Shown one piece after another: positions 16,813 through 64,000 of a DNA stretch of 64,000 nucleotides. The notes beneath the pieces were generated by a model. That model searched no databases and was not told where the DNA came from. It saw only the letters and a list, made by a program, of their open reading frames with translations. Position 1 is the stretch's first letter; each line of letters opens with the position of its first letter. The translations under genes were made by a program, and so were the position numbers. Source of the stretch: Macrostomum lignano. Taxonomy: Eukaryota. Location of the stretch: positions 1 to 64,000 of the forward strand of contig NIVC01002269.1 in assembly GCA_002269645.1 (NCBI GenBank), in the 5' to 3' direction.

Positions 16813-17116
16813 CTAAATATATACCAAGAGCAAATAACCGAAATTCCAAAGCACACAGAAAAAAAAATTATAATTAACAAGACTTAATTGTTTTGAAAAG
16901 CAAACTAACATTCATTAGATGCCTGATTTACTCTGCTTTTCCTTTTTCCTCTTCCGAAAAATTCCAAAAGTGAACTCTCGGAAATTTTTGGCCAGCGAAA
17001 TTAACATTCATGATGATACACGTTAGTGGATAAAGGTCATATGCAATAAAATAATTAACAAAAAACTACACGAGTTGACTCAAGAGAAGAGATCGGTGAA
17101 GACTTTCAGTTCACCA

Positions 17117-34300: not shown

Positions 34301-34725
34301 AGTGGGAGGAGGAAATGGACGAGGAGAAGCGCGCCATGCGCCTCATGCGTCTGGGCAAGCGTGACAACGACAAGCGCGCCATGCGCCTCATGCGCCTGGG
34401 CAAGCGTGACAACGACAAGCGCGCCATGCGCCTCATGCGCCTGGGCAAGCGTGACAACGACAAGCGCGCCATGCGTCTCATGCGTCTGGGCAAGCGTGAC
34501 AACGACAAGCGCGCCATGCGCCTCATGCGCCTGGGCAAGCGTGACAACGACAAGCGGGCCATGCGCCTCATGCGCCTGGGCAAGCGTGACAACGACAAGC
34601 GGGCCATGCGCCTCATGCGCCTGGGCAAGCGTGACAACGACAAGCGGGCCATGCGCCTCATGCGCCTGGGCAAGCGTGACGACATGGAAGAGAAGCGCGC
34701 CATGCGTCTCATGCGCCTTGGCTGA
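31392..34725 (+). CDS. npp-6: Myomodulin-like neuropeptide precursor, 242 aa, 12 x AMRLMRL-amide; exons 31392-31434 and 34040-34725
   Basis: Exon 1 MRHCTLTLLLAVVV(G|GTGAGT) joins phase 1 to CTCAG|CC-ATC, giving signal peptide MRHCTLTLLLAVVVAICMMNGATG. It is followed by acidic spacers and 12 copies of KR-AMRLMRL-G; the last ends G-stop. The symbol rests on recalled similarity to flatworm npp-6 AVRLMRL-amide. Confidence 0.93.
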
Positions 34726-37375: not shown

Positions 37376-39428
37376 ATTAAACGTCTTTCCGGCCGTGTCA
37401 CCTCCTCAGCTCGTAACATCATCATCATTTTCGACGGAAGACCGACCAAGACCGACGCGGAGGCGGCTAATCGGCTTAATAAACAGTTCACGCAGCCGCG
37501 TGCTCACTGTTCGAATCCAGCCATGCGCTTCGTCCGCCGCAAAGTTGCTGCACTCCCGCGCGAAGACCCTACCCTCCTGTATTTCTCCAAAGACAACCTG
37601 GTGCAGGCCATCAAACGCTCTAAGCCTTCGAAGGCTATCGGCCCTGACGGTATCTGTCCGCTAGTCATTAAACAGTTCGGCCCCAAAGCCATCGACGTGC
37701 TCCTCGGCCTGTTCAACCGTTCGCTGCACTACAATGAAATCCCCGCGGTTTGGAAGAAATCGCTGATCTGCCCATTAATCAAAAGTGGCAAACCTCCGGA
37801 TGACGGAGCCTCCTACCGCCCGATTTCGTTCCTCTCCCCGCTGGCTAAAATCTTTAAAAAACTCCTGCTGCCCCTGCTGACTGACGACCACCTTAAGCTC
37901 CCAGCTTGGCAGCACGGTTTCCGCCCAATGCACTCTACCACTACCGCATTGTGTCAGGTCGCCGAGCAGATCAGTACTGGTTTCTGCCAAGCCAAGCCCC
38001 CGGCGAGAACTGGCACTGCTGCTCTCGATCTGAAGGCTGCCTTTGATTGTGTGGACCACTGTGAGCTCATCACCGACGTCTTCAACTCCGACCTGCCGAA
38101 CCTCATCAAAGGCTGGCTCTGCAACTACCTTCTCGGTCGTCAAGCCCGCACAATACTGCGCGACTGCAAGTCCGCCTGGCGCCAAGTTTGTATGGGAGTG
38201 CCTCAAGGTAGCGCGATCAGCTCGCTTCTTTTCGCCTTCTACGAGCTACCTGAAGGACACCCCTACGCCGGATGACCCGAACTCCAGCCTTATCGGCTAT
38301 GCCGATGACCTTACAGCGGCTGCCTCTTCCGCGTCCATATCGCGCATCCAAGAGCAACTCAACGCCTACTTAACGCGCTTGGCGCCGTTCCTCCATGCCC
38401 GCAAGCTCAAGGTCTCGGCAGCAAAATGCACCACGACGCTCTTTACTCCGGACCAACGGGAGTACGCCAGGGCCCTCGAGGTCTACTTCGACGGTTCCAG
38501 ACTACTCCAGGCTCTCTATCCTAAAATCCTGGGCGTGATCTTTGATCCGAAGATGACGTTCAGCCGTCACGTCAAGGCCACTATCGAGAAGGCCCACAAA
38601 CGTAACAGCGTCCTCCGCTGCTTGGCGGGTAGCAGTTGGGGCAGCTGCAAGGAGCTGCTGCTCAACACTTACAAGGCCATTTCGCGCAGCATCCTCAACT
38701 ACGCTGCTCCTGTTTGGGGACCTGTCATCTCGTCCACCTCCTGGAACGGGCTCCAGTCGGTCCAAAACGCGGCCATTCGGTGCATCACCGGCTGCATCGT
38801 CAATACCTCTGTTGCCGACCTTCACTGCGAGACCCGGATGCTCGCGGTCCAGCAGCACAACAGGCTCCTGTCTCTCCAGTTCCTCCTGGCCTCTCGCCGT
38901 CCTGAGCACCCCTGCTACCACCTTTCCGCCTGACCGGCTCCTCGCCGGCGCATGAAGCCGTCCATTTTTACCGCACCATTCTTTGACGATTCCTGGCAGC
39001 CAGTCGACGCCCCGGCGGTCCTCGACGACGCGGCAGCCTGGGACAGGGCGAGGCGAGCTCAACACTCGCTCATCGTGCTCAATCACATCGACGGCCTACC
39101 TCCTAACCGCGTCGTCGGCCTTCGCCCCGACGTCTGCGATTCCGAGCGTTCTTTGCCGCGTCGGACCCGCTCTCTGCTCGCCCAGCTGCGCTCTGGCTTC
39201 AGTCCTATGCTTCTTAGTTACCAGCACCGGCTGAATCCTGAGACGCCTCCAAGCTGTCCTGAGTGCGACGCGGCCACGCATGATTGCCTGCATCTTTTTA
39301 ATTGCCCGGCTCACCCCACCGAGTTGGTGCCCTCTGACCTGTGGCGCAACCCTGTTGAAGTCGCTGAGTTCCTGTCGCTGCCTGTCCAGCGCGACCCTGG
39401 CGAGGGTTAAAAACAACAACAACAACAA
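37376..39428 (+). mobile_element. 5'-truncated, inactivated non-LTR retrotransposon (RT plus C-terminal Zn knuckle, no RNase H; I-group/Ingi-Vingi-like)
   Basis: Frame open from 37376 (IKRLSG...NKQFT). RT motifs GPDGI, YRPISFLSP, QHGFRP, LDLKAAFD, GVPQGS, YADD, ILGV. A 7-bp insertion at 38243-38249 shifts the frame; in-frame TGA at 38931. C-terminus LAQLRSG...CPEC...HLFNCP...DLW; stop at 39410 followed directly by (CAA)n. No endonuclease domain and no TSD seen. Confidence 0.92.
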
Positions 39429-41454: not shown

Positions 41455-44400
41455 TCAATCGTAGCCACTTTGCTGACTTGGCGGCGCAGCCTGGCCCATT
41501 AGCATGGCTCCCATTGGCAAACAGGAGAATAACGAAGCTGCCGTAGGTTGAATCATGCCGCCGCCGCTGCCGCTAGCAACAGCACCGGATGCGCTGCCGT
41601 AACTTGCAGTAGCACCCATTGATGCCGGCTGGGCGCTTAAATCTGGCATCGGACCTTCCAGCCACTGCAACACGATTTTTATAGATACTAAGATTTTCTC
41701 ATTAAAACTTTGCATAGCCATATTCGCTGCTTGGCTACTCATAGTAGGCTAAATGAATGTAAACAATGAAGTTTAGATGAAATAAGAAAATTTTCGATAG
41801 TCAAGATTGAGAGACAGTCATTCTGTTTTAGAAAATAGATAGAAGTAGTAGAACTATACTTTCAGAATACTACCGGTTTTCACACAGGAAGGTCTTACTT
41901 CCGGTTGTCAGAAGGAAGGCCCTACTTCCGGTTGTCAGACCGAAAAGTCCTATTTCCGGTTGTAAGAATGAAAGGCCCTATTTCCGGTCGCCACACTGAA
42001 AGGTCCTATTTCCGGTTGTCACATCAAAAGGTCCTACGCCGGTTATCAGACTGAAAGGTGCTACTTTCGGTTGTCAGACTGAAAGGTCCTGCTTCTGGTT
42101 GTCACATTGAAAGGTGTTACTTCCGGTTGTTAAAATGAAAGCCCCTAATTCTAGTTGTCACACCAAAAGGTGCTACTTCCGGTTGTTAGAATGAGATGCC
42201 CTACTCCAGTTGTTAGAATGATAGGCCCTACTTCCGGTTGTCAGATAGAAAGGCCCCACTTCCGTTTGTCAGACCGAAAGGCCGTATTTCCGGTTGTCAG
42301 ATTGAAAGGCTCCACTTCAGGTTGTCAGACAGAAAGGCCCCGCTTCCGGTTGTCAAAATGAAAGGCCCTACTTCTGATTGTCACACTGAAAGGTCCTACT
42401 TTTGGTTGCCATACTGAAAGGTCATACTTCCGGTTGTCACACTGTAAGTGCCACTTCCGGTTGTCAGACAGAAAGGCCCCGCTTCCGGTTGTCAAAATGA
42501 AAGGCCCTACTTCTGATTGTCAGACTGAAAGGTCCTACTTCCGGTTGTCACACTGAAAGGTCCTACTTTTGGTTGTCAGACTGAAAGGTTCTACTTCCGG
42601 TCGTAAGTCTAAAAGGTGTTTCCGGTTGTCACACTGAAAGGCTCTACTACTGGTTGTCAAATTCGGAGACCCTACTATTGTTCTGCAGATAGTAAATAAA
42701 TTAAAAACATGCACTCACGTAAACAAGTTGATGCTCAGGCTGGGCGGTGGCCATCTCAATGCTGACCTGATACTTGTGCAACAGTGCTGAGCACTGCTGA
42801 GCGCAGCTGGCCTCCAGCACAGAGTTACCCTCGGCTCTGTACAAATCGCGCATCAATGTGCTGGCCCACAATTGAACAGCTTCGTCGGGCATTTGATCGG
42901 CAAGCTGCACTGCCGTGTCGACTACATTTTTAACCTCATCGTATTGGCCAGTGGCAAAGTGAATCTGGCCGAGAACAATTAGCGAACAGGTGAGCATGCG
43001 CTTCAGGTTCTCCATGTTGGCCAGTTTCAAGCACTCGCGGATGTACACTCTGCAAGTCGATTTCGGGTGGTGCTTTTCTGGCTAGGTCTTTGTAGTTAAA
43101 TTATACAAATTATATTAAAGGAGAGAATTGAAGCACGAAGATCTTGGAGGCTGGCCCAGCAACCGAGGATCTGGGAGGCTGGCCCAGCAACTGAGGATCT
43201 GGGAAGATGGTGGTCAGCAACTGAGGATCTGGGAAGATGGTGGTCAGCAACTGAGGATCTGGGAAGATGGTGGTCAGCAACTGAGGATCTGGGAAGATGG
43301 TGGTCAGCAACTGAGGATCTGGGAAGATGGTGGTCAGCAACTGAGGATCTGGGAAGATGGTGGTCAGCAACTGAGGATCTGGGAAGATGGTGGTCAGCAA
43401 CTGAGGATCTGGGAAGATGGTGGTCAGCAACTGAGGATCTGGGAAGATGGTGGTCAGCAACTGAGGATCTGGGAAGATGGTGGTCAGCAACTGAGGATCT
43501 GGGAAGATGGTGGTCAGCAACTGAGGATCTGGGAAGATGGTGGTCAGCAACTGAGGATCTGGGAAGATGGTGGTCAGCAACTGAGGATCTGGGAGGCTGG
43601 CCCAGCAACTGATACTCTGGGAGGCTGGCCCAGCAACTGAGGATCTGGGAGGCTGGCCCAGCAACTGAGGATCTGGGAGGCTGGCCCAGCAACTGAGGAT
43701 TTGGGAAGCTGGCCCCAGCAACTGAGGTTCTGGGAGGCTGGCCCAGCAACTGAGGATCTGGGAGGCTGGCCCAGCAACTGAGGATCTGGGAGGCTGGCCC
43801 AGCAACTGAGGATCTGGGAGGCTGGCCCAGCAACTGAGGATCTGGGAGGCTGGCCCAGCAACTGAGGATCTGGGATGCTGGCCCAGCAACTGAGGATCTG
43901 GAAGGCTGGCCAAGCAACTGAGGATCTGGGAAGATGGTGGTGGTGGCCCAGCAACTGACACTCTGGGAGGCTGGCCCAGCAACTGACACTCTGGGAGGCT
44001 GGCCCAGCAACTGAGGATCTGGGAAGATGGTGGTGGTGGCCCAGCAACTGACACTCTGGGAGGCTGGCCCAGCAACTGAGGATCTGGGAGGCTGGCCTAG
44101 CAACTGACACTCTGGGAGATGGCACAGCAACTGAGGCTCTGGGAAGATAGAGGCTTGGCCGAACTCACTTGGCCTGGCCGAAGTCGCCTAGCATAAAGGC
44201 CAGCAGGCCCCGAACCCAGTGCCCGGCAGCCCTGAGTCCGTGCGGCGGATCCGGGTGCCGGAATTCGTCCAGCACGGATCGGCAATCGTTCAATCGATTC
44301 TGCCTGAGCATGAGCAGGGCCAGGTTAAGTTGAACCAGGTGCAACAGATCTGAGCGAGGCCGCTCGGCCAGGGCCCGCCTGAACTGGCTCTCAGCGGCGC

Positions 44401-47400
44401 CGAGGCAGTTGGTGCACATGCTGTACAGGGCTAGCATCGAGCGCGTGTGTGCCGCACGACCGCGCACCGGACACAACTCGGACAGCCGGACACAAGCGGC
44501 CAGATCGGATAGGGCACCCGGACGGTCGCCAGACACTAATCGGCATTGGAACAGTTGCTCCTGGTTGATGCGTGGTGGGGGAGCATCCGGATTGTGAATT
44601 AATGATAGGGGTCAGTCTAATGACTGTCAAAGGCCATTCTACTGACTGTCAAAAGCCATCATTCTAATGACTGTCAAAGACGATTTTAATGACTGTCAAA
44701 GGCAATTCTAATGACTGTCAATGACGATTCTAATGACTGTCAAAGGCCATTCTAATGACTGTCAAAGACGATTTTAATGACTGTCAAAGGCAATTCTAAT
44801 GACTGTCAATGACGATTCTAATGACTGTCAAAGGCCAATCTAATAACTGTCAAAGGCCATTCTAATGACTGTCAAAGACCATTCTAATGACTGTCAAAGG
44901 CAATTCTAATAACTGTCAAAGTGCAATTTTAATGACTGTCAAAGGCAGTTCTAATGACTGTCAAAAGCCATCATTCTAATGACTGTCAAAGGCGATTCTA
45001 ATGACTGTCAAAGGCTATTATAATGACTGTCAAAGGCTATTCTAATGACTGTCAAAGGCCATTCTAATGACTGTCAAAGGCCATTCTAATGACTGTCAAA
45101 GGCGATTCTAATGACTGTCAAAGGCTATTATAATGACTGTCAAAGGCTATTCTAATGACTGTCAAAGGCCATTCTAATGACTGTCAAAGGCAATTCTAAT
45201 AACTGTCAAAGTGCAATTTTAATGACTGTCAAGGGCAGTTCTAATGACTGTCAAAAGCCATCATTCTAATGACTGTCAAAGGCGATTCTAATGACTGTCA
45301 AAGGCTATTATAATGACTGTCAAAGGCTATTATAATGACTGTCAAAGGCTATTATAATGACTGTCAAAGTGCAATTCTAATGACTGTCAAAGGCCATCAT
45401 TCTAAGGACTGTCAAAGGCGATTCTAATGATTGTCAAAAGCCATTCTAATAACTGTCAAAGGCCATTCTAATGACTGTCAAAGACGATTTTAATGACTGT
45501 CAAACGGAGATTCTAAGGGAAAAGCTAGTCACATTTTAGATAATAGGGGGCAGCTCACCTGAATGCACAGCTGCAGCGCTAGAAATAGTCTGTTACTAAT
45601 ATTATTATTCAGACTGGTAGTTGCGCCTCCAGTTCCGTCTGAAACTGCGCGCAGCTTCTCAAGCTGCATCAGGGCTTTGTCGGCGTAGCGTCGAACCTGC
45701 GTTGAGAAAAGCGCAAGCACGTGGGTTGAGAAACAGTTTAATACCATGTAGTTTGATTCTTTCAAAAATAAAATTTTAATCCAGGTCAACTGACTACAAT
45801 GCTTTAAGTTAAGTAGAGTTGGTAGCGGTTAGTACACAGATAATCCAGAGGTGCGGATCATGACGGTCAAGACCGAGGGGGGATCCTGTCGGTCAAAACC
45901 CAGGGGTGGGTGATCCTGACGGTCAAGACCCTGGGGAGGGATCCTGTCGGTCAAAACCCAGGGGTGGGGGATCCTGACGGTCAAGACCCAGGGGTGGGGG
46001 ATCCTGACGGTCAAGATCCAGGAGTGGGGGATCCTGACGGTCAAGACCCTGGGGAGGGAGCCTGACGGTCAAGACCCAGGGGAGGGAGCCTGACGGTCAA
46101 GACCCAGGGGTGGGGGGATCCTGACGGTCAAGACCCAGGGGTCGGGGATCCTGACGGTCAAGACCCAGGGGTCGGGGATCCTGACGGTCAAGACCCAGGG
46201 GAGGGAGCCTGACGGTCAAGACCCAGGGGTCGGGGATCCTGACGGTCAAGACCCAGGGGAGGGAGCCTGACGGTCAAGACCCAGGGGTCGGGGATCCTGA
46301 CGGTCAAGACCGAGGGGGGATCCTGTCGGTCAAAACCCAGGGGTGGGGGATCCTGACGGTCAAGACCCAGGGGTGGGGGATCCTGACGGTCAAGATCCAG
46401 GAGTGGGGGATCCTGACGGTCAAGACCCAGGAGTGGGAGCCTGACGGTCATGACCCAGGGGTGGGGGGATCCTGACGGTCAAGACCCAGGGGTCGGGGAT
46501 CCTGACGGTCAAGACCCAGGGGAGGGAGCCTGACGGTCAAGACCCAGGGGAGGGAGCCTGACGGTCAAGACCAAGGGGAGGGAGCCTGACAGTCAAGACC
46601 CAGGGGAGGGAGCCTGACAGTCAAGACCCAGGGGAGGGAGCCTGACAGTCAAGACCCAGGGAGGGAACCTGACGGTCAAGACCCAGGGAGGGAGCCTGAC
46701 GGTCAAGACTTAGGGGAGGGAGCCTGACGGTCAAGACCCAGGGGGCGGATCCTGACGGTCAAGGGCAAAAGGGGGACAAGGGGTCAAGAAACAGAGGGGC
46801 ACAAGGGGTCAAGAAACAGAGGGGGACAAGGGGTCAAGAAACAGAGGGGCACAAGGGGTCAAGAAACAGAGGGGGACAAGGGGTCAAGAAACAGAGGGGC
46901 ACAAGGGGTCAAGAAACAGAGGGGGACAAGGGGTCAAGAAACAGAGAGGGACAAGGGGTCAAGAAACAGAGGGGGACAAGGGGTCAAGAAACAGAGGGGG
47001 ACAAGGGGTCAAGAAAAAGAGGGGGACAAGGGGTCAAGAAACAGAGGGGGACAAGGGATCAAGAAACAGAGGGGGACAAGGGGTCAAGAAAAAGAGGGGG
47101 ACAAGGGGTCAAGAAACAGAGAGGGACAAGGGGTCAAGACCTAAAGAGGGGGGGGGGGCAGATCCGAGGGCTCAAGACCTCAAAAAGATGATGTAAAACA
47201 CCATACACTTCCATCGCTAACCTTATCGTAAGTGGCCTCCTGCATGCAGTGGAGCAGAGTGAGCAGATAGGTGAGCACAGACAGCTGCTCCCTGCTAAGC
47301 CACTCCAGCTGGCCTAGAGCTTCCAGTTCTTCGGACAATTCCAAACCGGAAGACCCATCGGCCGCGGCGGAAACAGACGCGTAACCGGAAGTTGAAGCGG

Positions 47401-50400
47401 TCGACGAGCCGGAAGCGGCTGCGGCGACGGCAGCGGCCTCTTCTTGCATAGCCGAATAAGACTGCACAGAGCGTTGCAGCTGGCGCAGGATTGGGCGAGC
47501 CTGTTTGGCCTGGCCAGCCACCAGACTGTTCAACACCTGGACAGGTGGTGGGCATTTTAAAACGTTAAAGAAACCCAGAATCACGCCAGTCTGAGCTGTC
47601 ACATCTCACCTCGTTCAGATCCCATCTCAGAATCACGCCAGTCTGAGCTGTCACATCTCACCTCGTTCAGATCCCATCTCAGAATCACGCCAGTCTGAGC
47701 TGTCACATCTCACCTCGTTCAGATCCCATCTAAGAATCACGCCAGTCTGAGCTGTCACATCTCACCTCGTTCAGATCCCATCTCAGAATCACGCCAGTCT
47801 GAGCTGTCACATCTCACCTCGTTCAGATCCCATCTAAGAATCACGTCAGGCTGAACTGTCACATCTCACCTCGTTCAGATCCCATCTCAGAATCACGTCA
47901 GGCTGAACTGTCACATCTCAACTCGTTCAGATCCCATCTCAGAATCACGTCAGGCTGAACTGTCACATCTCACCTCGTTCAGATCCCATCTCAGAATCAC
48001 GCCAGTCTGAGCTGTCACATCTCATCTCGCTCAGATCCCATCTCAGAATAGAAATCCCCACTTCCTAAATCCCTTAAACAGATCCCTATCCAAAACCCAT
48101 AAACTCCATAAATCATGGAGACAGATGACAACTGAACGCAAGCAGAGAATACCAATTAAACCCAACAGCTACCTCTACTACACACATATCGCACCTGAAT
48201 GAGTAAAGAGAAAGTTCTCAACGCCTCCTGTCGTCGCGGATGCGGCATCTGGTCCACCAGCTTGGAAGCCACAGTCAGGGTGTTGTGCACCTCGGCCAGC
48301 TGCCTGTTGGCCAGCAGCGGCACGCACTTGGCCAGCAGGAAGAGGCCCCTGGCGTATTCGCTGCCGTGCTGTTGCGCGTATTGCGAACCGAGCGCCAATA
48401 GCTCGCAGGCCCGCGAGGAATCCGATGAGCTGAGGCACTGCGCCTGCTTGAGTAGGAAGCGGCCGTACCTGCGGTGGCAAATGCATTGGGATACAGTTAG
48501 AGTAGCCATGATTGCGTATGCACTGACATTTAGTTGCTATGACCATCTATGAACTGACATTTAGTTGCTATGACCATCTATGCACTGACATTTAGTTGCT
48601 ATGACCATCCATGCAACTGACATTTAGTTGCTGTGACCATCTATACACTGACATTTAGTTGCTATGACCATCTATACACTGACATTTAGTTGCTATGACC
48701 ATATATGCACTGACATTTAGTTGCTGTGACCATTTATGCACTGACATTTAGTTGCTGTGACCATATATGGTGACCATATATGGACTGACATTTAGTTGCT
48801 ATGACCATATATGGACTGACATTTAGTTGCTATGACCATATATGGACTGACATTTAGTTGCTATGACCATATATGGACTGACATTTAGTTGCTATGACCA
48901 TATATGGACTGACATTTAGTTGCTGTGACCATATATGGACTGACATTTAGTTGCTATGACCATATATGGACTGACATTTAGTTGCTATGACCATATATGC
49001 ACTGACATTTAGTTGCTATGACCATATATGGAGAGAAATTTCACTGCTAAGACTGGAATTAATATTAGCTGGCACTGAAATTGTCTTTTAAGTGATATTA
49101 GGCGGAAAGAAACTGTCTACGGAGTGACTTGGCGAAAGCGACTGTCTATGGAGTGATTTTTGGTGAAAGAGACTCTCAAAAAGTTTATCAGTTATCACCT
49201 CAGCGCAACACATCAAGGTCAAGTCACACTGAAACTCACCATTCAGGCAGGTGCTGGCTAAGTCTAGCAGCCTCTTCAAGCAGCTGCGGCAGTCGAAACG
49301 CCCCGCTAAGCTGCTCATTGCTTGAGTACAAATCTGACAGCAGATCAGCGGCGTGAAGGCAAGCGGCTAACAAGTCGGCTACGTCAGTTGAGCCAGTAGC
49401 AAAGAGAGAGCGCAGCTTCCAGGCGGCCTCCAGATGCTGGGCCGCCTTGTCCTGACAGGATCGGGCGGCGTGCTGCATCAGCAGGCGACCAATCTGTAGG
49501 TTGGTCCTGTCAAGGTTGACCCGGGGGGGGATTGTGCACTAAATCAACTATCGCGATACGCGCTCATACAATCGCTCACACGAGAGAGCGACCCTGATAT
49601 ATAGCTTTCTAATCGTCAAGGCATGTACATCCTCTGCGTCTTGGGGTTGGCCCAAGGACAACTCAAAGAAGGACGGGAAACTACGTTTCTTAGAAAAAGT
49701 AACGGAGGCTGGTTTTCGCGGAAAAAAGTATAAGGACGGGAAACTACGTTTCTTAGAAAAAGTAACGAAGGCTGGTTTTCGCGGAAAAAAAAGTATAAGG
49801 ACGGGAAACTACGTTTCTTAGAAAAAGCTGAGGCTGGTTTTCGCGGAAAAAAAAGTAGGACGGGAAACTACGTTTCTTAGAAAAAGTAACGGAGGCTGGT
49901 TTTCGCGGAAAAAAGTAGCATGGGAAACTACGTTTCTTAGAAAAAGTAACGGAGGCTGGTTTTCGCGGAAAAAAGTATAAGGACAGGAAATTACGTTTCT
50001 TAGAAAAAAGTTAAGAAGGCTGGTTTTCGCCGAAAAATACACTACAGAGATGGGAACTTTTCACTTTTCATATTAAAAATATGAAAGGCAGATCCAATGT
50101 TCATATTTGATATGTTGTGCTTTTCTTATAGCTCTATTATTATTTAATAAAGGTTTTCGTTCAGAAAATTAGGGTTCTAAGTCATTTTTTTATTTACAGC
50201 TCGACTCTTTGGTTTCAGGAATCTACTTTATCATCTGTTACACATATTTGTTACACAGTCAGCTAAGAATGATAAAATAGATTTATAAAGATGAACATTA
50301 TGTCTGCCTCCTATCCAAAGCAATAAGAATTTTAATGTTTAAAAATTGAAAAGCTCCTATCTCCGTAGTGTATTTTTCGGCGAAAACCAGCCTCCTTAAC

Positions 50401-51805
50401 TTTCTGAGTTGTCCTTGGGTTGGCTCTCATTGCTGCGAATTGCACGAAAACCTGAATAGGCTGAGAGTGATTGGCAAATATGGCAAATACTCGCAAGGCT
50501 CGGGCTCCAGAAAGGGCGGCTGGAGCCTGAGCAATAGACACTCTTGCCTATTGAGTAGCTAAAATTGAGCTAAAAAACATGAAAGATTGGCAGTGTGTTC
50601 TTACATAACCCGTTGAAAGCGTTACTGCGACAAGGATCGCTAGAGGGTCATAGTAAACAACTCACTAGCAGCGACTTTAGCGACTTTTTAACAATTAAAA
50701 CGACCGCAATGCGACGCAAAGGCGACTGTTGAGTCACGAGCGCATCACGTGGGTTTCGGAATTGCAAGAGTGGCGAAAACGTCGTTGTGCAAACGCTTAA
50801 CTTTCTACTAGCTCAGTAGACTAAATAGAGTTTTTATAAATGCGAAATGCGCTCAAGACGCAACTCGGTGATTCCACAGCGACTCGGGAGCATGAACCAG
50901 AGACGACTCTACGGCCCCATATTTATTACAGAAGCGCCCGAGAGTCGTTACAGAGTCGCAGACAATCAAACACCTCAAATTGACTTTTGGGTGACTCTTA
51001 GACGTTATCGTTTTAGAGTCGTCTAGAGTCACTTCTTTCCTATTTTACCTGTGTTATCTGCAACGACTCTGGGGCGACCCAGGTGACACAGGGACGCTTC
51101 TAGGCCTAGACGCATCTGAAGGCTGCGTACGGCTGTTCAGTCCAAGGACTGGGGAGTCGCCACAGACACCCTCAATTACCCCAGCTAATGCTGGCACCCA
51201 TTTTACAGCTGGGTGAATTGAAGCAATGCAGAGTGAAGTGTCTTGCCAAAGGACACAAATTGTTCCAGTTCCAGTGGGACCGGGAATCGAACCCCCGACC
51301 TTCAAATCGTGAGTCTGACGCTCTGACTATTAGGCCAGAATCTAGATAGCGGGGTCTGCACAAAGTCAAAACTCAGTAAAGCCAATCTTGATAGCTCAAA
51401 ACCTCACAAATTTCGAGCTTGCGAAAGAGAATCTAAATAACATAATGCGGACTTCAGAGATAGTACCGGCAAACCCCAACCGCTAATAGTGAAACCAATA
51501 AAAGTGCAAACCCACCAAGCCAATTGCAGATCAGTCAATTTGCAGTGCAAAGCCGCTTTTAAACAATGCAAACAGAGTTGATAATTGCCGTCAACTCTGA
51601 ACCGCTCGGCCATGCCTAGCAGGGAGGCGTAGCAGGCCTCCTGATCTGCCCATTCCGAGGCGCCGTGAGCAGCCTGGCTGGTCGATGGCGCCGCCGATGA
51701 CGCCAATGCTTTGCTGCCATGATGCGAAGCCGCAGCGGATGAGACCGGTTCGACCGGCTCCTCCAGAGCGCGGGATAAAAAGGATTCTGAGTTCCAATGA
51801 CTCAT
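41455..51805 (-). CDS. MAU2: MAU2/Scc4 cohesin loading factor, 738 aa; exons 51805-51516, 49506-49240, 48468-48195, 47536-47222, 45696-45559, 44560-44169, 43049-42719, 41664-41455
   Basis: All seven introns are GT-AG with matching phases; exon lengths sum to 2217 nt. Motifs match human MAU2: [100 protein letters not shown]. The start Met is the less certain part; an upstream in-frame ATG exists at 51910. Confidence 0.96.
41893..42660. repeat. 28-bp degenerate minisatellite, MAU2 intron 7
   Basis: Consensus CTTCCGGTTGTCAGACTGAAAGGTCCTA. Confidence 0.92.
43137..44150. repeat. Compound 30-bp/28-bp minisatellite, MAU2 intron 6
   Basis: Units CAGCAACTGAGGATCTGGGAAGATGGTGGT and GGCTGGCCCAGCAACTGAGGATCTGGGA share a core. 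Confidence 0.96.
44615..45500. repeat. 22-bp minisatellite, MAU2 intron 5
   Basis: Unit CTAATGACTGTCAAAGGCCATT. Confidence 0.95.
45855..47140. repeat. Two adjacent minisatellites (~28 bp, then 25 bp), MAU2 intron 4
   Basis: GATCCTGACGGTCAAGACCCAGGGGTGGGG-type to ~46760, then GGGGGACAAGGGGTCAAGAAACAGA; both share GGTCAAGA. Confidence 0.95.
47575..48047. repeat. 52-bp minisatellite (9 units), MAU2 intron 3
   Basis: Unit AGAATCACGCCAGTCTGAGCTGTCACATCTCACCTCGTTCAGATCCCATCTC. Confidence 0.96.
48520..49030. repeat. 31-bp minisatellite (~16 units), MAU2 intron 2
   Basis: Unit CTGACATTTAGTTGCTATGACCATATATGGA. Confidence 0.96.
49653..50417. mobile_element. hAT-like MITE in MAU2 intron 1 whose left subterminal unit is amplified (63 bp x ~6)
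   Basis: TIR CAAGGACAACTCA / TGAGTTGTCCTTG; flanks GGTTGGCC and GGTTGGCT (7/8; alternatively an exact 6-bp GTTGGC). Positions 50360-50402 are the inverted copy of 50010-50050. Confidence 0.75.
51030..51340 (-). mobile_element. tRNA-derived CORE-like SINE, copy 2 (MAU2 intron 1)
   Basis: Reverse complement is colinear with copy 1 from the A box through GGACTGAACAGCCGTACGCAG.CTTCAGATGCG, then the tails diverge. Confidence 0.88.
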
Positions 51806-51914
51806 GGGATGGGGATCGGGGCCGGGACTGTCGAACTGGGAGACTGCAAGGCGAGCGGTGGTGGTGTGCAAGGGGGCGAATTGGTCTGACTTAAGTGCCC
51901 CCCTAAGCATGTCT

Positions 51915-53924: not shown

Positions 53925-55710
53925 TTGGCGTGACACTTCTTTTTATGTTTGAAACGGTGTCTCTTTTATGTTTGAAATGGTGGCTCTTTAATGTTTGAAA
54001 TAGTGTTTCTTCTATGTTTGACATGGTGGCTCTTTTGTGTTTCACATGATAGCTCTTTAATTTTTGACATGTAGCACTTCTATGTTTGACATGGTAGCTC
54101 TTTAATGTTGACATGGTGGCTCTTCTATGTTTAAAATAGTGTTTCTTCTATGTTTGACATGGTGGCTCTTTTGTGTTTCACATGATAGCTCTTTAATTTT
54201 TGACATGTAGCACTTCTATGTTTGACATGGTAGCTCTTTAATGTTGACATGGTGGCTCTTCTATGTTTGACATGGCAGCCCTTTTATGTTTAAAATGGTG
54301 TCTCTGTTATGTTTGACATAGTGGCTCAGTTGTTTGACATGGTAGCTCTTTAATGTTTGACATGGAGTCACGTATATGTTTGACTTAGTGGCTCCCTTAT
54401 GTGTGGCATGAATCATGATGTCTCTTTTATGTTTATTGTTTGACATGGTGGCTCTTTAATTTTTGACTTGGAGTCACGTATATGTTTGACATGGTGGCTC
54501 CTTTATGTGTGGCATGGTGGCTCTTTTATGTTTGACATGGTGGCCCTTTTACATTTTAAATGGTGTCTTTTTTGTTTGGCATGGTGGCTCAATAATTTTT
54601 TGACATGGTAGCTCTTTTTTGTTTGATATGGTGGCTCCTTTGTGTGTAACAGTGTCTCTTTTATGTTTAATGTTTGACATAAAGTCATGTATATGTTTGA
54701 CATGGTAGCACTTTAATGTTTGACATGGTTGCTTTTGAATGTTTTGCATAGTGGCTTTTTATTGTTTGACATGAAGTCATGTATATGTTTAACATGGTAG
54801 CTCTTTAATGTTTGACATGGTTGCTCTTTAATGTTTGACATGGTGGCTCTTTAATGTTTGACAATTGACATGGTGGCTTTTTTATGTTTGACATGGTGGC
54901 TTTTTATTGTTCGAAATGGTTGGCTCTTTTTATGTTTGGCATAGTGGCTCTTTTATGTTTGACATGGTCATGGTGGCTCTTTTATGTTTGGCATGGTGGC
55001 TCTTTAATGTTCGACATGGTTGGCTATTTTATGGTTGGCATGGTGGCTCTTCTATGTTCAACATGGTGGCTCTTTTTGATGTTTGGCAAGGTGGCTCATT
55101 AATGTTTGACATGGTGGCTCTTTTATGTTTGACATAGAGTCACGTATATGTTTGACATGGTGGCTCTTTAATGTTTGACATGGTGGCTCTATAATGTTTG
55201 ACACGGTGGCTCTTTAATGTTTGATATGGTGGCTCATTAATGGTTGACATGGTGGCTCTTTAATGTTTGACATGGTGGCTCTTTAATGTTTGACATGGAA
55301 TAACGTATATGTTTGACATGGTGGCTTTTAAATGTTTTTCATAGTGGCTCTTTTATGTTTGACATGGAGTCACATACATGTTCAACATGGTGGCTCTTTT
55401 ATGTTCAACATGGTGGCTCTTTTATGTTTGACATGGTGGAGCTTTAATGTTTGACATGGTGACTCTTGAATGTTTGACATGGTGACTCTTAAATGTTTAA
55501 CATGGTGACTCTTTAATGTTCCACATGGTGGCTCTTTAATGTTTGACATGGTGGCCCTTTACATTTGAAATGGTGTCTTTTTTATGTTTGGCATGGTGCC
55601 TCAATAATGTTTTGATATGGTGGCTCTTTTATATCTGACATGGTGACTCTTTTATGTTTGACATGGTAGCTCTTTTATGTTTGACATGGATGGTGGCTCT
55701 TTTTTGTTTA
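53925..55710. repeat. Old, degenerate ~23-bp minisatellite
   Basis: Consensus TTTGACATGGTGGCTCTTTAATG with many substitutions. Confidence 0.9.
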
Positions 55711-58980: not shown

Positions 58981-59822
58981 GTGAATTTATCCGAATATGA
59001 TCCTATTAAAATCAAGTATGACTGGATTAAAAAACGCAAATAAATTTTCTGTTGGCGACCATAGTCTTGAACAAATAACCAAGAAAAAATGCCCCATAAG
59101 ACCACAAGTATATTCTTCTTCACTCGTGTACCCATGCAGCTCGCATGTAAAATCATCTTAAACCGTCTTAATCGGACGTAATTCCTCAAAAATGCTGCTC
59201 CTTTTTTGCATTCTTGATCAAATAGTCAGCTGTTTTTTCTTACTTTTATGCCTTTCTGAAAAGTTATACATGTACTTGCATGGAGCAACTATAAACTATA
59301 AATTGTACCTAGATATGTAACCTGTAAATAAATGGATAGCAATCGACTTTCATTCTATACTGAATAATAATGAAATGAATGGCTCTAAAAAGCTGCTTTA
59401 TAGCAATTTGTTTCTAGTTTTAATTCGGTAATTTAACAAGCAGCTGCAACTACGATCGCTACATTCATTGATCTATATATATAGAGTTTTGATTTATAGG
59501 TATAGATTATGCTTACAGTTCGTGTTCCTTTTGTCGATACAAGTGTACTTTTTATATTAGATGATGGGCATAGCGTACTAAATACATGCTAGTGTATTGG
59601 ATGCTGCATTTTACACTGTATACAGCATGTATCAACAGAAAAAATGTAGACACGAGCTAATCAGATATTTGAGTACGTTAATTCGGCTGGATTATAAATC
59701 TATGTACATGTACAAAAACTTCGCACATTTACAAGCTCTGTACCTATATGAAATTATCCTTTGAATGAACTGCTATCCATGTACATGTTGCTCATACAAT
59801 TTCAGACGGCAAATTTAGCAAA

Positions 59823-61542
59823 ATGGAAAAGCTGCTGGTCATTCAGACAGGAGGTAAGAAATTTGAGCTCGTCGTTTAGGGCCTGTTCAAACATCAGTTG
59901 GATGCAGGAAACCTACATTGAAAGTAGGTTTTTGAACATACTTCCTTCCTGGATCCTTTCTAAGGTGTGTCCTTTTTAAGGTCCTCGGGTCATAGGGTCT
60001 TTCAGATCATCAGGCTGGGGCCACCATCTTCCTTTATCATCAGGTTGGGGCCACCATCTTCCTTTATCATCAGGTTGGGGCCACCATCTTCCTTTATCAT
60101 CAGGTTGGGGCCACCATCTTCCTTTATCATCAGGTTGGGGCCACCATCTTCCTTCATCATCAGGTTGGGGCCACCATCTTCCTTTATCATCAGGTTGGGG
60201 CCACCATTTTCCTTTATCATCAGGTTGGGGCCACCATCTTCCTACACCATTTTCCTTCCAATCTTCATGTAGTTTGGTAACCTATTTTATAGCTAGATCA
60301 AAACTGTCGATTCCCCAGGCACCATAGACAAATGCTATCCCAGAGCCATCGGAGGCTACGCCTTTGAGTTCGGGGACAGCGGCTATTGCCGTCAACTATT
60401 GGAGCGACAGCTCTCCGATTGGGAGTCGCGATTCGAATTTCTATCGATATTTGCCAAAGACGGTCAGGACATTTCCGACGTGTGTGTGTGCGTGTGCATG
60501 CTCAAGAGTCAGCGGATTGGGCACGACTGCTTAACTGCCTTCTCACTGGCTGCGGTTCGACTGTCACCTTGAGCTAAGGCAGTATCTAAACTGCCCCACT
60601 AAGGTAATTGGTATAAAAAACCACGCGAACTAATTTATTGCAGAGTAAAATTGGCCGAGGTCATTAAGTCGAGCGGCAGTCGAAGGGTCCTTGTAACGCA
60701 TGGCACGGACACACTGTTGGACACGGCCAGGTTTCTTCAGAGCTACCTAAAATCAGGGAGGGCACTTACATGTATATTGTCGGTATTTTCTTTATAAATA
60801 ATCAACTATCCTTACCAGTTAACTGCACCAAATATGGAATCCCAGTGCATGATGAATGGAAATTGATGAGTATCAAAAGGCTCATTAAGGGATTAATCAG
60901 ACTAGAAAGGCACTTCCCGTTCCGTCCCGTTCCGTCCCGTTCCGTCCCGTTCCGTCCCGTTCCGTCCCGTTCCGTCCCGTTCCGTCCCGTTCCGTCCCGT
61001 TCCGTCCCGTTCCGTCCCGTCCCGTTCCGTCCCGTTCCGTCCCGTTCCGTCCCGTTCCGTCCCGTTCCGTCCCGTTCCGTCCCGTTCCGTCCCGTTCCGT
61101 CCCGTTCCGTCCCGTTCCGTCCCGTTCCGTCCCGTTCCGTCCCGTTCCGTCCCGTTCCGTCCCGTTCCGTCCCGTTCCGTCCCGTTCCGTCCCGTTCCGT
61201 CCCGTTCCGTCCCGTTCCGTTCCGAATTAGCACGACAGCTCACGCGCCTAATTCTCTACAGACTTTGACGTCGCCAGCACCGCAGCGCCAGTTGTAATTC
61301 TGACCGGCGCCAGACTGCCCGGCGCTTTCAAAGACACCGACGCCGATTTAAACATCGGCTTTGCCCTCGGCTGTCTGGCCGCCGCCAGACCCGCTGCCAG
61401 AGACCAGGCCAATGGCGGCAATCGGACAACGTTGCTCAAGCCAGGTGTTTACACCTGTATGAACCTGCGACTCATGCGACCCGACGAAGTGGTCAGGAAT
61501 TTGGAAACCGGAGCGTTTGACTGGCCTGCCTGTTCCGACTAA
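59823..61542 (+). CDS. Short-chain, single-domain class 1 (bacterial-type) L-asparaginase-like protein, ~200 aa; exons 59823-59853, 60319-~60481, 60644-~60771, 61262-61542
   Basis: MEKLLVIQTG|GTIDKCYPR..GYAFEFG...KDGQDISD...LAEVIKSSGSRRVLVTHGTDTLLDTARFL...VVILTGARLPGAFKDTDADLNIGFALG...PGVYTCMNLR...VVRNLETGAF. Contains GGT and HGTDT motifs; AATAAA at 61639. The exon 2/3 and 3/4 donor positions are not fully resolved. Confidence 0.9.
60004..60245. repeat. 30-bp minisatellite (8 units), asparaginase intron 1
   Basis: Unit TCATCAGGTTGGGGCCACCATCTTCCTTTA. Confidence 0.95.
60916..61222. repeat. (CCGTTCCGTC)n 10-bp repeat, asparaginase intron 3
   Basis: Read directly from the sequence. Confidence 0.97.
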
Positions 61543-61797
61543 CGCGTCACAAATATCCGCATCGATGCGACCGATATTTCTAAGAAATTCGAAATCATGC
61601 AGAAGTTGTCCGTGATTGAGCACTAAGACAATCGGTGCAATAAATCACTTTTAGTTGCAAAAAATTGTTTTGACTGACAATGGTTATTGATTTGATATTA
61701 TTGTACGAGTATTTATTACACCGAATTCGATTTATATACACATAACGACGATAGACGTTAAATATTACGAAAATATGTCAGGCTGTGGCCGTGTGCT

Positions 61798-63285
61798 GGA
61801 CTGTAATTAAACTTTTGGTCTTCTTCGATCGGGACTCATCCGGATTCTGGGATCGGGACTCATCAGGATTCTGGAATCGGGACTCATCGGGATTCTGGGA
61901 TCGGGATTCATCAGGATTCTGGGATCGGGACTCATCAGGATTCTGGGATCGGGATTCATCAGGATTCTGGGATCGGGATTCATCAGGATTCTGGGATCGG
62001 GATTCATCAGGATTCTGGGATCGGGATTCATCAGGATTCTGGGATCGGGATTCATCAGGATTCTGGGATCGGGATTCATCAGGATTCTGGGATCGGGATT
62101 CATCAGGATTCTGGGATCGGGATTCATCAGGATTCTGGGATCGGGATTCATCAGGATTCTGGGATCGGGACTCATCGGGATTCTGGGATCGGGATTCATC
62201 AGGATTCTGGGATCGGGACTCATCAGGATTCTGGGATCGGGACTCATCAGGATTCTGGGATCGGGATTCATCAGGATTCTGGGATCGGGATTCATCAGGA
62301 TTCTGGGATCGGGATTCATCAGGATTCTGGGATCGGGATTCATCAGGATTCTGGGATCGGGATTCATCAGGATTCTGGGATCGGGACTCATCAGGATTCT
62401 GGGATCGGGACTCATCAGGATTCTGGGATCGGGACTCATCGGGATTCTGGGATCGGGATTCATCAGGATTCTGGGATCGGGACTCATCAGGATTCTGGGA
62501 TCGGGACTCATCGGGATTCAGGGATCGGGATTCATCAGGATTCTGGGATCGGGACTCATCGGGATTCTGGGATCGGGATTCATCAGGATTCTGGGATCGG
62601 GACTCATCAGGATTCTGGGATCGGGACTCATCAGGATTCTGGGATCGGGATTCATCAGGATTCTGGGATCGGGATTCATCAGGATTCTGGATCGGGATTC
62701 ATCAGGATTCTGGGATCGGGATTCATCAGGATTCTGGGATCGGGATTCATCAGGATTCTGGGATCGGGACTCATCGGGATTCTGGGATCGGGATTCATCA
62801 GGATTCTGGGATCGGGACTCATCATGATTCTGGGATCGGGACTCATCAGGATTCTGGGATCGGGATTCATCAGGATTCTGGGATCGGGATTCATCAGGAT
62901 TCTGGGATCGGGATTCATCAGGATTCTGGGATCGGGATTCATCAGGATTCTGGGATCGGGATTCATCAGGATTCTGGGATCGGGACTCATCAGGATTCTG
63001 GGATCGGGACTCATCAGGATTCTGGGATCGGGACTCATCGGGATTCTGGGATCGGGATTCATCAGGATTCTGGGATCGGGACTCATCTCGAGCTGCACAC
63101 CCTCGCGCTCGTAAAAGTTGGCCATGTAGGCGGCCTTATCCTCATCGGACATGGAGGAGGAACCGCCAGACTCTTCCTTGAGCAGTGTGTCGGCGTCCGT
63201 GCGCACACTTTTGCTACACAGAGTCCCATGCCGACCCATTGTGCGCGATAGCAATGGTCCCTTTTGTAAAAACCGCTAGTTTAAA
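61798..63285 (-). mobile_element. Decayed Polinton/Maverick (adintovirus-like) protein-primed DNA polymerase B remnant, interrupted by a minisatellite
   Basis: KGTIAIAHNGSAWD (63264-63223) resembles the ExoII motif. After a frameshift and large deletion, DTLLKEESG...SDEDKAAYMANFYEREGVQLE (63191-63087) matches the pPolB TFLKxKxEASG...EEKxxYIxxYxExEGIxLD segment. Beyond the array, PDRRRPKV*LQS lines up with NPGxRxxAKLxLNS (motif B). Confidence 0.8.
61826..63086. repeat. 24-bp minisatellite (~52 units)
   Basis: Unit GGGATTCATCAGGATTCTGGGATC; a single-base deletion near 62690 shifts the frame of the repeat ORFs. Confidence 0.97.
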
Positions 63286-63287
63286 GG

Positions 63288-63500
63288 CAGGGAGAGAGGC
63301 AGGGAGAGAGGCGGGGAGAGAGGCAGGGAGAGAGGCAGGGAGAGAGGCAGGGAGAGAGGCAGGGAGAGAGGCAGGGAGAGAGGCAGGGAGAGAGGCAGGG
63401 AGAGAGGCAGGGAGAGAGGCAGAGGAGAGAGGCAGGGAGAGAGGCAGGGAGAGAGGCAGGGAGAGAGGCAGGGAGAGAGGCAGGGAGAGAGGCAGAGGAG
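63288..63500. repeat. 12-bp purine-rich tandem repeat
   Basis: Unit AGGGAGAGAGGC. Confidence 0.96.
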
Positions 63501-64000
63501 AGATGCAGGCTGGGGCACCAGCCAAAGGGAGGGGCCCGGCTATTATCAATACTGGTCGGACACCCACCTTGCCTCCAGCATGTATTAAGTACTGTGCGAC
63601 TGAATATATCTCTTCAGAAGTGTGCAGTTGGTCAATCCAAAACCCCACGAAAGCTCAAGTTGAAAGCCTGAAAGAAATCTCTTCCATTCATTGCCTTGAG
63701 TACAGTGAAACCTGAGAACTCACAAAAACGGTTTGGAAAGAGGGGGTGAGAGAAAAATGAATGTACATGTACTGCTCATGAGACGCCTGTGCGCACAACG
63801 CCTTCCATGCTTTTTACCATGCGATAGCAGCAAACTGTGCACACTGCTTTCTCATTTCTGTCCCCCGCTACTGCTTCGGTACAAAAAGAGCCAGCTTGGA
63901 AAAGACAAAATTTTATAAATTCTTGCGCACCACTGACGGGACTCCTGCGGATAGCCCCCCCCCCCAACGAACGTTCGTTGGAGAGCCCACCCAACGAACT

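What the first reader, a model, noticed from the sequence alone, without database searches (positions are those of the whole stretch)
59823..61542. Intron-containing, bacterial-type short-chain L-asparaginase in an animal genome
Seen: four exons, invisible in the ORF track, splice into a ~200-aa protein with GGT and HGTDT motifs that stops after the N-terminal domain. Known: typical animal asparaginases are the two-domain ankyrin-fused ASPG type or the Ntn-hydrolase ASRGL1 type, whereas a lone N-terminal domain starting GGTIDKxYP is the short-chain class described in bacteria (Rhodospirillum rubrum-type). Inference: a domesticated horizontal acquisition that gained introns, or a patchily retained ancient family.
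Basis: partly seen in the sequence, partly recalled or inferred. Interest (0 to 1): 0.72.

Follow-up and report, generated by a model that had tools for sequence, protein, structure and literature searches.

The report
Short-chain asparaginase gene in a flatworm
The window, from the flatworm Macrostomum lignano, holds a real four-exon gene for a half-length "short-chain" asparaginase so far described only in bacteria, but the same gene, with two introns at the same positions, occurs across many invertebrate phyla, so it is an old animal gene and not a recent bacterial import.

Summary
Four + strand exons with GT-AG borders (59823-59853, 60319-60487, 60644-60771, 61262-61542) splice into about 202 aa. 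The product is a lone asparaginase N-terminal domain (Pfam PF00710). Its best solved relative is the 172-aa Rhodospirillum rubrum enzyme RrA.

The window is Macrostomum lignano: its coatomer-zeta exon is 99-100% identical to that species.

This is a short-chain (class 1 "type s") asparaginase homologue, but not a lineage-specific acquisition. Members of 160-200 aa occur in sponges, echinoderms, hemichordates, amphioxus, a tunicate, molluscs, an annelid, a brachiopod, a nemertean, schistosomes and crustaceans. Introns 1 and 2 sit in the same codon and phase in amphioxus, a sea urchin, an oyster and a sea slug; intron 1 also in a schistosome. The gene therefore predates the bilaterian ancestor.

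All animal copies, and the nearest prokaryotic ones, have Arg where RrA has its essential Lys158. The Macrostomum copy alone has Gly at the substrate-binding Ser58, which is invariant in 202 homologues. Activity is therefore inferred, not shown, and a decaying copy is not excluded. The searched scASNase papers mention no eukaryote, although databases already list the animal proteins.

Verdict: a new member of a known kind, of moderate interest.

The parts
59800..59805 (+). tttcag, a possible 3' splice acceptor (5'-UTR exon or spliced-leader trans-splice site), 17 nt upstream of the ATG
   Evidence: Sequence reading only. Inference, untested.
59823..59853 (+). Exon 1 (31 nt): MEKLLVIQTG + the first base of the second Gly of TGGTIDK
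   Evidence: It is the first ATG after an in-frame stop. The start matches schistosome homologues (MEILVIQTGGT).
59854..60318 (+). Intron 1 (phase 1), GTAAGA...CCCCAG. Holds a 30-bp minisatellite at 60006-60243 (7.9 copies).
   Evidence: Same codon and phase in Heterobilharzia, Diadema, Saccostrea, Elysia and Branchiostoma. In Pecten the tblastn exon ends place it at the same point; phase not mapped.
60319..60487 (+). Exon 2 (169 nt). Carries the nucleophile Thr12, Lys15, Tyr17, Asp58 and the unusual Gly59. Alternative donors lie at 60481 and 60493 within the (GT)n run.
60488..60643 (+). Intron 2 (phase 2), GTGCGT...TTGCAG
   Evidence: Same alignment column and phase as Diadema, Saccostrea, Elysia and Branchiostoma. 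Pecten has the split Arg codon at both exon ends in tblastn.
60644..60771 (+). Exon 3 (128 nt). Carries HGTDT (Thr88, Asp89).
60772..61261 (+). Intron 3 (phase 1), GTATAT...CTACAG. Not seen at this position in the other genes mapped. Holds a (TCCCGTTCCG)n array at 60915-61224.
   Evidence: The junction is supported by colinear similarity to the intronless TARA homologue P0001 (YLKAKLAAYTNLF against YLKSGRALTYFDV).
61262..61542 (+). Exon 4 (281 nt). Holds a 16-aa insert, Arg188 at the position of RrA Lys158, and the TAA stop at 61540-61542.
61639..61644 (+). AATAAA polyadenylation-type signal, 97 nt after the stop
   Evidence: Consensus match only.

Best explanation
This is an intact nuclear gene of the free-living flatworm Macrostomum lignano. 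It is missing from the M. lignano protein sets in the searched collection.

**What it encodes.** A protein of about 202 aa of the short-chain asparaginase family (scASNase, class 1 'type s', prototype R. rubrum RrA). It is a single Rossmann-like asparaginase N-terminal domain with no C-terminal domain.

**Its history.** The copy descends vertically from a gene already present, with introns 1 and 2, in the bilaterian ancestor. Related intronless genes exist in sponges.

**How it most likely works (by analogy with RrA; inferred).** It is a cytosolic homotetramer. Thr12 attacks the side-chain amide of L-asparagine to form an acyl-enzyme. Lys15 and Tyr17 assist proton transfer. Thr88, Asp89 and a C-terminal basic residue carry out deacylation, releasing aspartate and ammonia.

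**Two departures from RrA.**
- Like all animal members, it has Arg (Arg188) where RrA has the essential Lys158.
- Uniquely, it has Gly where every homologue examined has the substrate-binding Ser58.

Its activity or substrate preference may therefore be weakened or altered.
For: **Gene model and family**
- Canonical splice sites and an open frame across four exons.
- PF00710 over residues 3-149.
- Best PDB matches are the R. rubrum short asparaginase entries 8uoo and relatives: E 4e-10 for the single sequence, and E 5.5e-37 over the whole length with the family profile. The next best, a long asparaginase, scores 4e-20.
- Full-length colinearity with homologues and the same stop position.
- No Pfam domain, and so no asparaginase C-terminal domain, in the + frames downstream.

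**Host**
- 99-100% identity of the neighbouring coatomer-zeta exon to M. lignano.

**Vertical descent**
- Homologues in at least 11 animal phyla.
- Intron 1 (phase 1, second Gly of TGG|TIDK) shared with Heterobilharzia, Diadema, Saccostrea, Elysia and Branchiostoma; Pecten's exon ends put it at the same point.
- Intron 2 (phase 2) shared with Diadema, Saccostrea, Elysia and Branchiostoma; Pecten's exon ends agree.
- Signatures shared with schistosomes: TIDKCYP, YAFEFGDS and a 2-aa insert before KD.
- Mean identity to other animals is 42%, against 43-45% for schistosomes, so divergence is no greater than in other flatworms.

**Active-site residues**
- Equivalents of T16, K19, Y21, D57, T87 and D88 are all present.
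- Their roles come from Zhang et al. 2024 (PMC10949315).
Against: - There is no transcript evidence. The tools could not look up the spliced protein.
- No M. lignano homologue appears among the hits, although M. lignano proteins are in the database.
- Gly59 replaces a Ser that is invariant in 202 homologues. Zhang et al. call this Ser crucial for substrate binding.
- The protein departs from consensus at 5 of 37 columns that are at least 90% conserved: S59G, D66C, R67V, K119P and G178L. The median for the family is 1.
- K158M kills RrA, and I found no assay of any Arg-type member.
- The intron-2 donor lies in a (GT)n run and is ambiguous.
- Monophyly of the animal sequences is not resolved by the neighbour-joining tree.
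Confidence: 0.7

Rival explanations
1. A redundant copy under relaxed constraint: an unexpressed or decaying paralogue in the recently duplicated M. lignano genome. It is still open by chance and is no longer an asparaginase.
For: - The unique loss of the invariant Ser58, and 5 of 37 conserved columns changed.
- A (GT)n run has overwritten the conserved D-R codons at the exon 2 donor.
- Microsatellites fill introns 1 and 3.
- No annotated M. lignano protein is found.
Against: - A 606-nt frame is intact across four exons, all with GT-AG sites, two of them at ancestral positions.
- The other six active-site residues are kept.
- Divergence is similar to that of schistosome orthologues.
- An AATAAA signal is in place.
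Confidence: 0.2
2. A recent horizontal acquisition from bacteria in the Macrostomum or flatworm lineage, which later gained introns.
For: - The family was described only in bacteria (PMC10949315).
- Some prokaryotic members are about 50% identical to animal ones.
Against: - Two introns share codon and phase with deuterostomes and molluscs.
- Homologues occur in at least 11 animal phyla.
- Indels and motifs are shared with schistosomes.
- No bacterial sequence is closer than 41%.
Confidence: 0.04
3. The 5' part of a long (ASPG or AnsA-type) asparaginase gene whose C-terminal exons were missed.
For: PF00710 is also the N-terminal domain of the long enzymes.
Against: - The stop falls at the family-typical position after the conserved GVY..MNG...R.ETG.F tail.
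- The best structural relatives are the short RrA entries, by 17 orders of magnitude.
- NCBIfam type I and II models score far below their cut-offs.
- No Pfam domain lies in the + frames to the window end; a 24-bp satellite and a possible minus-strand exon follow.
Confidence: 0.03
4. Bacterial contamination or misassembly.
For: None beyond the bacterial flavour of the family.
Against: - Spliceosomal introns carry the same kind of minisatellites as the rest of the window.
- The gene lies on one 64-kb stretch with M. lignano COPZ, cohesin-loader exons and a reverse-transcriptase element.
Confidence: 0.01

Closest known systems
RrA, the Rhodospirillum rubrum short-chain L-asparaginase (scASNase; class 1 'type s'; PDB 8uoo, 8uou and others)
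   Same: - A single asparaginase N-terminal domain of about 170-200 aa with no C-terminal domain.
- The GGTIDK and HGTDT motifs.
- Equivalents of Thr16, Lys19 (the scASNase hallmark), Tyr21, Asp57, Thr87 and Asp88.
- It is the best PDB match over the full length.
   Different: - Only about 37% identity between RrA and the animal members.
- Arg instead of the essential Lys158.
- Gly instead of Ser58.
- RrA's Asn26, contributed across protomers, is not conserved in this subgroup.
- Two extra surface inserts.
- A eukaryotic gene with three introns.
- In the tree, the Lys-type (RrA-like) and Arg-type groups split with 100% bootstrap.
Arg-type short asparaginase homologues of invertebrates, annotated only automatically (for example Branchiostoma LOC118414066, Crassostrea 'probable L-asparaginase 2', Lingula 'L-asparaginase 1', Schistosoma mattheei A0A... 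protein)
   Same: The same architecture, the same Arg at the Lys158 position, the same introns 1 and 2, and the same start and stop positions.
   Different: The Macrostomum copy is more derived:
- S59G.
- The D-R motif is lost at the exon 2 donor.
- A third intron and two inserts.
- Only 38-46% identity to the others.
ASPG (60-kDa lysophospholipase/asparaginase) and bacterial AnsA/AnsB
   Same: A homologous N-terminal catalytic domain and the threonine-based mechanism.
   Different: These enzymes have the C-terminal domain, and ASPG adds ankyrin repeats. They complete the active site from within the tight dimer. The window protein scores only 28 bits against the type I model, whose cut-off is 260.
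ASRGL1 / plant-type (class 2, Ntn-hydrolase) asparaginases
   Same: The nominal reaction only.
   Different: An unrelated fold. No Pfam match to that family.

Membership tests
scASNase (short-chain class 1 'type s' L-asparaginase, RrA family) | Single asparaginase N-terminal domain, 160-200 aa, no C-terminal domain | tested here: met
   PF00710 is the only significant domain. The stop is at the family position. No Pfam domain in the downstream + frames.
scASNase (short-chain class 1 'type s' L-asparaginase, RrA family) | Sequence closer to RrA than to long type I or type II enzymes | tested here: met
   RrA entries score E 5.5e-37, against 4e-20 for the best long enzyme. The single sequence gives 4e-10 against 4e-3.
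scASNase (short-chain class 1 'type s' L-asparaginase, RrA family) | Nucleophile Thr16, Tyr21, Thr87 and Asp88, plus the scASNase-specific Lys19 and Asp57 | tested here: met
   All six are present in the window protein: T12, Y17, T88, D89, K15 and D58. Roles are from PMC10949315.
scASNase (short-chain class 1 'type s' L-asparaginase, RrA family) | Substrate-binding Ser58 | tested here: not met
   The window has Gly59 (codon GGT). Ser is present in 202 of 202 homologues.
scASNase (short-chain class 1 'type s' L-asparaginase, RrA family) | Catalytic Lys158 (K158M is inactive in RrA) | tested here: not met
   Arg188 in the window. The position is Arg in 149 of 202 homologues, including every animal member sampled, and Lys in 50. 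Zhang et al. note that this Lys is only moderately conserved in the family.
scASNase (short-chain class 1 'type s' L-asparaginase, RrA family) | Homotetramer with the active site completed by another protomer; L-asparagine hydrolysis with millimolar Km | not testable with these tools
Metazoan Arg-type scASNase orthologue group | Phase-1 intron in the second Gly of TGG|TIDK, and phase-2 intron in the codon after D-x-D | tested here: met
   Same column and phase as Branchiostoma, Diadema, Saccostrea and Elysia, when exon 2 ends at 60487.
ASPG / long type I-II asparaginases | C-terminal asparaginase domain (plus ankyrin repeats in ASPG) | tested here: not met
   The stop follows the N-domain. TIGR00519 scores 28 bits against a cut-off of 260. 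Nothing downstream.
ASRGL1 / Ntn-hydrolase asparaginases | Asparaginase_2 (Ntn) fold with an autoproteolytic Thr | tested here: not met
   No such Pfam match.

The most novel reading that the evidence does not exclude
Animals carry a third, so far undescribed kind of asparaginase-family enzyme: Arg-type short-chain proteins.
- They were acquired by exchange with prokaryotes before the bilaterian radiation, perhaps at the base of Metazoa.
- Sponges and Owenia have intronless genes, and bilaterians share two introns.
- None of the animal hits shown comes from a vertebrate, insect or nematode, but only the top 120 of 7787 were listed, so loss there is a guess.
- Because the Lys that is indispensable in RrA is Arg throughout this clade, these proteins may have a chemistry or substrate other than plain L-asparagine hydrolysis.
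- The Macrostomum copy (Ser58 to Gly) would be a further specialisation.
Probability: 0.3. Interest if true: 0.6.

Novelty: new member of a known kind. Interest (0 to 1): 0.42.

Why it matters
Short-chain asparaginases were defined in 2024 as a bacterial family. They were placed in class 1 as 'type s' in 2026. Every solved structure comes from one bacterium, and the two papers I read mention no eukaryote.

This gene is a convenient entry point to a different picture. The family is widespread in marine and parasitic invertebrates and in sponges. It has bilaterian-age introns, and every animal member sampled has Arg in place of the catalytic Lys.

That matters in three ways:
- for how animal asparagine catabolism is described, currently as ASPG and ASRGL1 only;
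- for an old prokaryote-animal gene exchange that can be dated by introns;
- for enzymologists seeking small asparaginases of animal origin.

For the Macrostomum locus itself, the result is an ordinary missed gene annotation with an odd active-site change.

Tried and rejected
- **Alternative splice models.** Donors at 60481 (200 aa) and 60493 (204 aa) keep the frame, but they shift intron 2 off the conserved column and give the wrong length. Pairing donor AG|GTTTCT with an acceptor inside exon 4 would delete the conserved F/Y-L helix end and make the segment 5 aa shorter than any homologue. I rejected that by reading the sequence. Treating the 16-aa insert (AARPAARDQANGGNRTTLLK) as a mini-intron would delete 9 family residues. 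The intronless TARA homologue P0001 has an insert at the same place.
- I tried to look up the spliced protein on transcript contigs and to predict its structure.
- **Tree.** A Biopython bootstrap tree timed out. I replaced it with my own neighbour-joining script using Kimura distances and 200 bootstraps. It resolves only the Arg-type/Lys-type split and shallow clades, not animal monophyly.
- **Naming hits.** Naming the EukProt and metagenome hits through cluster look-up gave no organism names.
- **Literature.** Searches for animal short asparaginases, for asparaginase in Macrostomum, and for the peptide string MRLMRL found nothing relevant.
- **Second copy.** There is no second copy of the gene in the window.

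Full report
**1. What is in the sequence**

Reading 59000-64000 and translating three frames shows four coding pieces on the + strand.

| Exon | Coordinates | Borders |
|---|---|---|
| 1 | 59823-59853 | ATG; donor GTAAGA |
| 2 | 60319-60487 | acceptor ...ccccag |
| 3 | 60644-60771 | acceptor ttattgcag; donor GTATAT |
| 4 | 61262-61542 | acceptor ctctacag; TAA stop |

These join in frame. Exon 2 ends in a (GT)n run that offers three in-frame donors, giving 200, 202 or 204 aa. The ATG is the first after an in-frame stop. An AATAAA lies 97 nt after the stop. Introns 1 and 3 are mostly tandem repeats: a 30-bp unit at 60006-60243 and a 10-bp unit at 60915-61224. The mechanical ORF list shows only spurious ORFs there.

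**2. What the protein is**

- Pfam finds only PF00710, the asparaginase N-terminal domain (E 1.2e-11).
- NCBIfam type I and II models score far below their cut-offs.
- Against PDB sequences, the best matches are the 185-residue tagged chains 8uoo and relatives, at E 4e-10. Long asparaginases follow at about 4e-3.
- With a profile of animal homologues, the same entries score E 5.5e-37 over the full length, against 4e-20 for the best long enzyme.
- These entries are RrA from Rhodospirillum rubrum, the prototype of the short-chain asparaginases (scASNases) (Zhang et al. 2024, PMC10949315). The family has since been placed as 'type s' of class 1 (PMC12951835).
- The window protein aligns end to end with 160-200-aa homologues and stops where they do.
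- The downstream + frames hold no Pfam domain.

It is a short-chain protein, not a truncated long one.

**3. Whose genome**

The long exon at 20933-22504 (-) encodes coatomer zeta. It is 99-100% identical to two Macrostomum lignano entries, and the next hits fall to 62-63%. The window also carries cohesin-loader (MAU2-type) exons, a broken reverse transcriptase and very many minisatellites. The host is the free-living flatworm M. lignano, so 'animal genome' is right.

**4. Distribution**

- A single-sequence search found 93 homologues. All have a single PF00710 domain and most are 160-195 aa (a few up to 264 aa). They include schistosomes, scallop, oyster, Owenia, krill, sea urchins and sea slugs, alongside Bacteroidota and other prokaryotic MAG proteins. 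The best identity was 41%.
It added Branchiostoma (3 species), Clavelina, Ptychodera, Glandiceps, Acanthaster, Antedon, Lingula, Lineus, Mytilus, Haliotis, Penaeus and the homoscleromorph sponges Oscarella and Corticium.
- Only the top 120 were listed, so absence from other phyla was not tested.
- No M. lignano protein appeared, so the gene is missing from the M. lignano protein sets held there. Those sets are present, as one search shows. For COPZ, the M. lignano hits came only from UniRef and NCBI. The absence therefore speaks to annotation, not to expression.

**5. Intron positions**

I rebuilt exact exon maps from the genomic loci (scripts).

| Species | Intron 1 (phase 1, second Gly of TGG\|TIDK) | Intron 2 (phase 2, codon after D-x-D) | Exon 2 length |
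|---|---|---|---|
| Window (donor 60487) | yes | yes | 169 nt (three extra codons) |
| Branchiostoma | yes | yes | 160 nt |
| Diadema | yes | yes | 160 nt |
| Saccostrea | yes | yes | 160 nt |
| Elysia | yes | yes | 160 nt |
| Pecten | exon ends agree (tblastn only) | exon ends agree (tblastn only) | not exactly mapped |
| Heterobilharzia | yes | no; different later introns | 209 nt |

- With donor 60487, the window's intron 2 falls in exactly the shared column and phase. That is why I prefer the 202-aa model.
- Intron 3 of the window lies in a lineage-specific insert and is not shared.
- Owenia and both sponges are intronless.
- The simplest reading is a gene with two introns in the bilaterian ancestor. 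Parallel gain at proto-splice sites (both junctions read AG|G) cannot be formally excluded, but it would have to have happened many times.

**6. Relation to prokaryotes**

- A neighbour-joining tree (165 columns, 69 sequences, 200 bootstraps) gives one strong deep split, at 100%. One side holds RrA, Oleiharenicola and eight metagenome proteins. The other holds everything else: all animals plus Ignavibacteria, Bacteroidota, Saccharimonadales and Aenigmatarchaeota MAG proteins.
- The split coincides with the residue at RrA Lys158: Lys on the RrA side, Arg on the other.
- Within the Arg group the backbone is unresolved. Animal monophyly is neither supported nor rejected.
- Some prokaryotic members are about 50% identical to animal proteins, the same as animal proteins are to each other (50-54%).
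- One of them sits in a dense, co-directional bacterial gene array on a 203-kb contig. These are real bacterial genes.
- This closeness, together with the intronless sponge genes, leaves room for an ancient exchange between prokaryotes and an early animal or pre-animal lineage. It does not support a transfer into Macrostomum.
- The window protein's mean identity to non-flatworm animals is 42%, like schistosomes at 43-45%. It shares TIDKCYP, YAFEFGDS and a 2-aa insert with them.

**7. Active site**

I used RrA numbering and the roles given by Zhang et al..

| RrA residue | Role or note | Window residue | Among 202 homologues |
|---|---|---|---|
| Thr16 | nucleophile | Thr12 | T 199 |
| Lys19 | scASNase-specific; K19A leaves 1% activity | Lys15 | K 199 |
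| Tyr21 | proton transfer | Tyr17 | Y 201 |
| Asp57 | binds substrate amino group | Asp58 | D 202 |
| Ser58 | binds the substrate alpha-carboxylate | **Gly59** | S 202; the window is the only exception |
| Thr87 | deacylation | Thr88 | T 199 |
| Asp88 | deacylation | Asp89 | D 200 |
| Lys158 | K158M leaves 0% activity | **Arg188** | R 149 (every animal member sampled), K 50 |

The window also departs from consensus at D66C and R67V (next to the (GT)n donor), K119P and G178L. That is 5 of 37 highly conserved columns, against a family median of 1.

**8. Interpretation**

- Shown: the gene, its family, its host, its wide animal distribution and the shared introns.
- Inferred: that it is expressed, that it forms an RrA-like tetramer, and that it hydrolyses L-asparagine by the two-threonine mechanism.
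- The Arg-for-Lys change across the whole animal clade means that no biochemically tested enzyme represents this subgroup.
- The Gly59 change means the Macrostomum copy may bind substrate poorly, may have shifted specificity, or may be a duplicate drifting towards loss. I cannot separate these without transcripts and homeologues.

**9. Novelty**

The searched literature describes scASNases only in bacteria. The animal proteins exist in RefSeq and UniProt only under automatic names such as 'probable L-asparaginase periplasmic' or 'uncharacterized protein'. The locus is therefore a new, unannotated member of a known family. The family-level point (animal scASNases, ancient introns, Arg subtype) is modestly surprising, but it can be read off public databases.

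Noticed in passing
window 34003-34725 (+); 45-bp repeat at 34327-34722: The ORF encodes at least 10 copies of KR-AMRLMRLG-KR separated by acidic spacers. That is the layout of a neuropeptide precursor: dibasic cleavage sites and a C-terminal Gly for amidation, predicting AMRLMRL-amide. There is no Pfam hit, and the peptide string is absent from the searched literature. From memory only, flatworm '-RLamide' peptides look similar. In this minisatellite-rich genome it could also be just a 45-bp repeat.
   Followed up: partly
window 20933-22504 (-): A single long exon encodes most of coatomer subunit zeta and is 99-100% identical to M. lignano. The mechanical ORF runs on into a 33-bp minisatellite (20768-21875).
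   Followed up: yes
window 37523-39410 (+): A non-LTR retrotransposon remnant. Reverse transcriptase (RVT_1) is split over two overlapping frames, so it carries a frameshift.
   Followed up: partly
window 44165-51910 (-): Exons matching the cohesin loading factor (PF10345, MAU2/SCC4 type) with TPR repeats. They are interspersed with several minisatellite-filled introns.
   Followed up: partly
window, throughout (e.g. 10113-11723, 15296-16528, 17107-17933, 27434-28885, 53941-55689, 61827-63087): An extraordinary density of long minisatellites: periods of 15-46 bp, 20-75 copies, 87-97% matches. Many produce long artefactual ORFs in several frames.
   Followed up: partly
window 63085-63254 (-): An exon-like ORF (MLSRTMGRHGTLCSK...DEDKAAYMANFYEREGVQLE) abuts the 24-bp satellite downstream of the asparaginase gene. 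It has no Pfam match and is probably the first exon of a minus-strand neighbour.
   Followed up: partly
protein P0094 (EukProt transcript, 378 aa): Two complete short-chain asparaginase domains are fused in tandem in one eukaryotic transcript of unknown species. This is a way of making a covalent dimer that is not seen in the other homologues.
   Followed up: partly
locus L001 (TARA Oceans scaffold, gene 864-1523): This is the closest homologue of the window protein (41% identity, sharing both inserts). It is an intronless 219-aa ORF on an AT-rich scaffold with 860 bp of ORF-free upstream DNA, so it is probably from an unidentified marine eukaryote.
   Followed up: partly
loci L004 (Owenia), L008 (Oscarella), L009 (Corticium): These animal scASNase genes have no introns, whereas bilaterians from molluscs to amphioxus share two. 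That fits either intron gain after an intronless origin, or retrogene replacement.
   Followed up: partly
locus L002 (Heterobilharzia americana, gene 6001-27199): The schistosome orthologue keeps intron 1, but its other two introns are at different positions. One of them is about 20.6 kb long.
   Followed up: no
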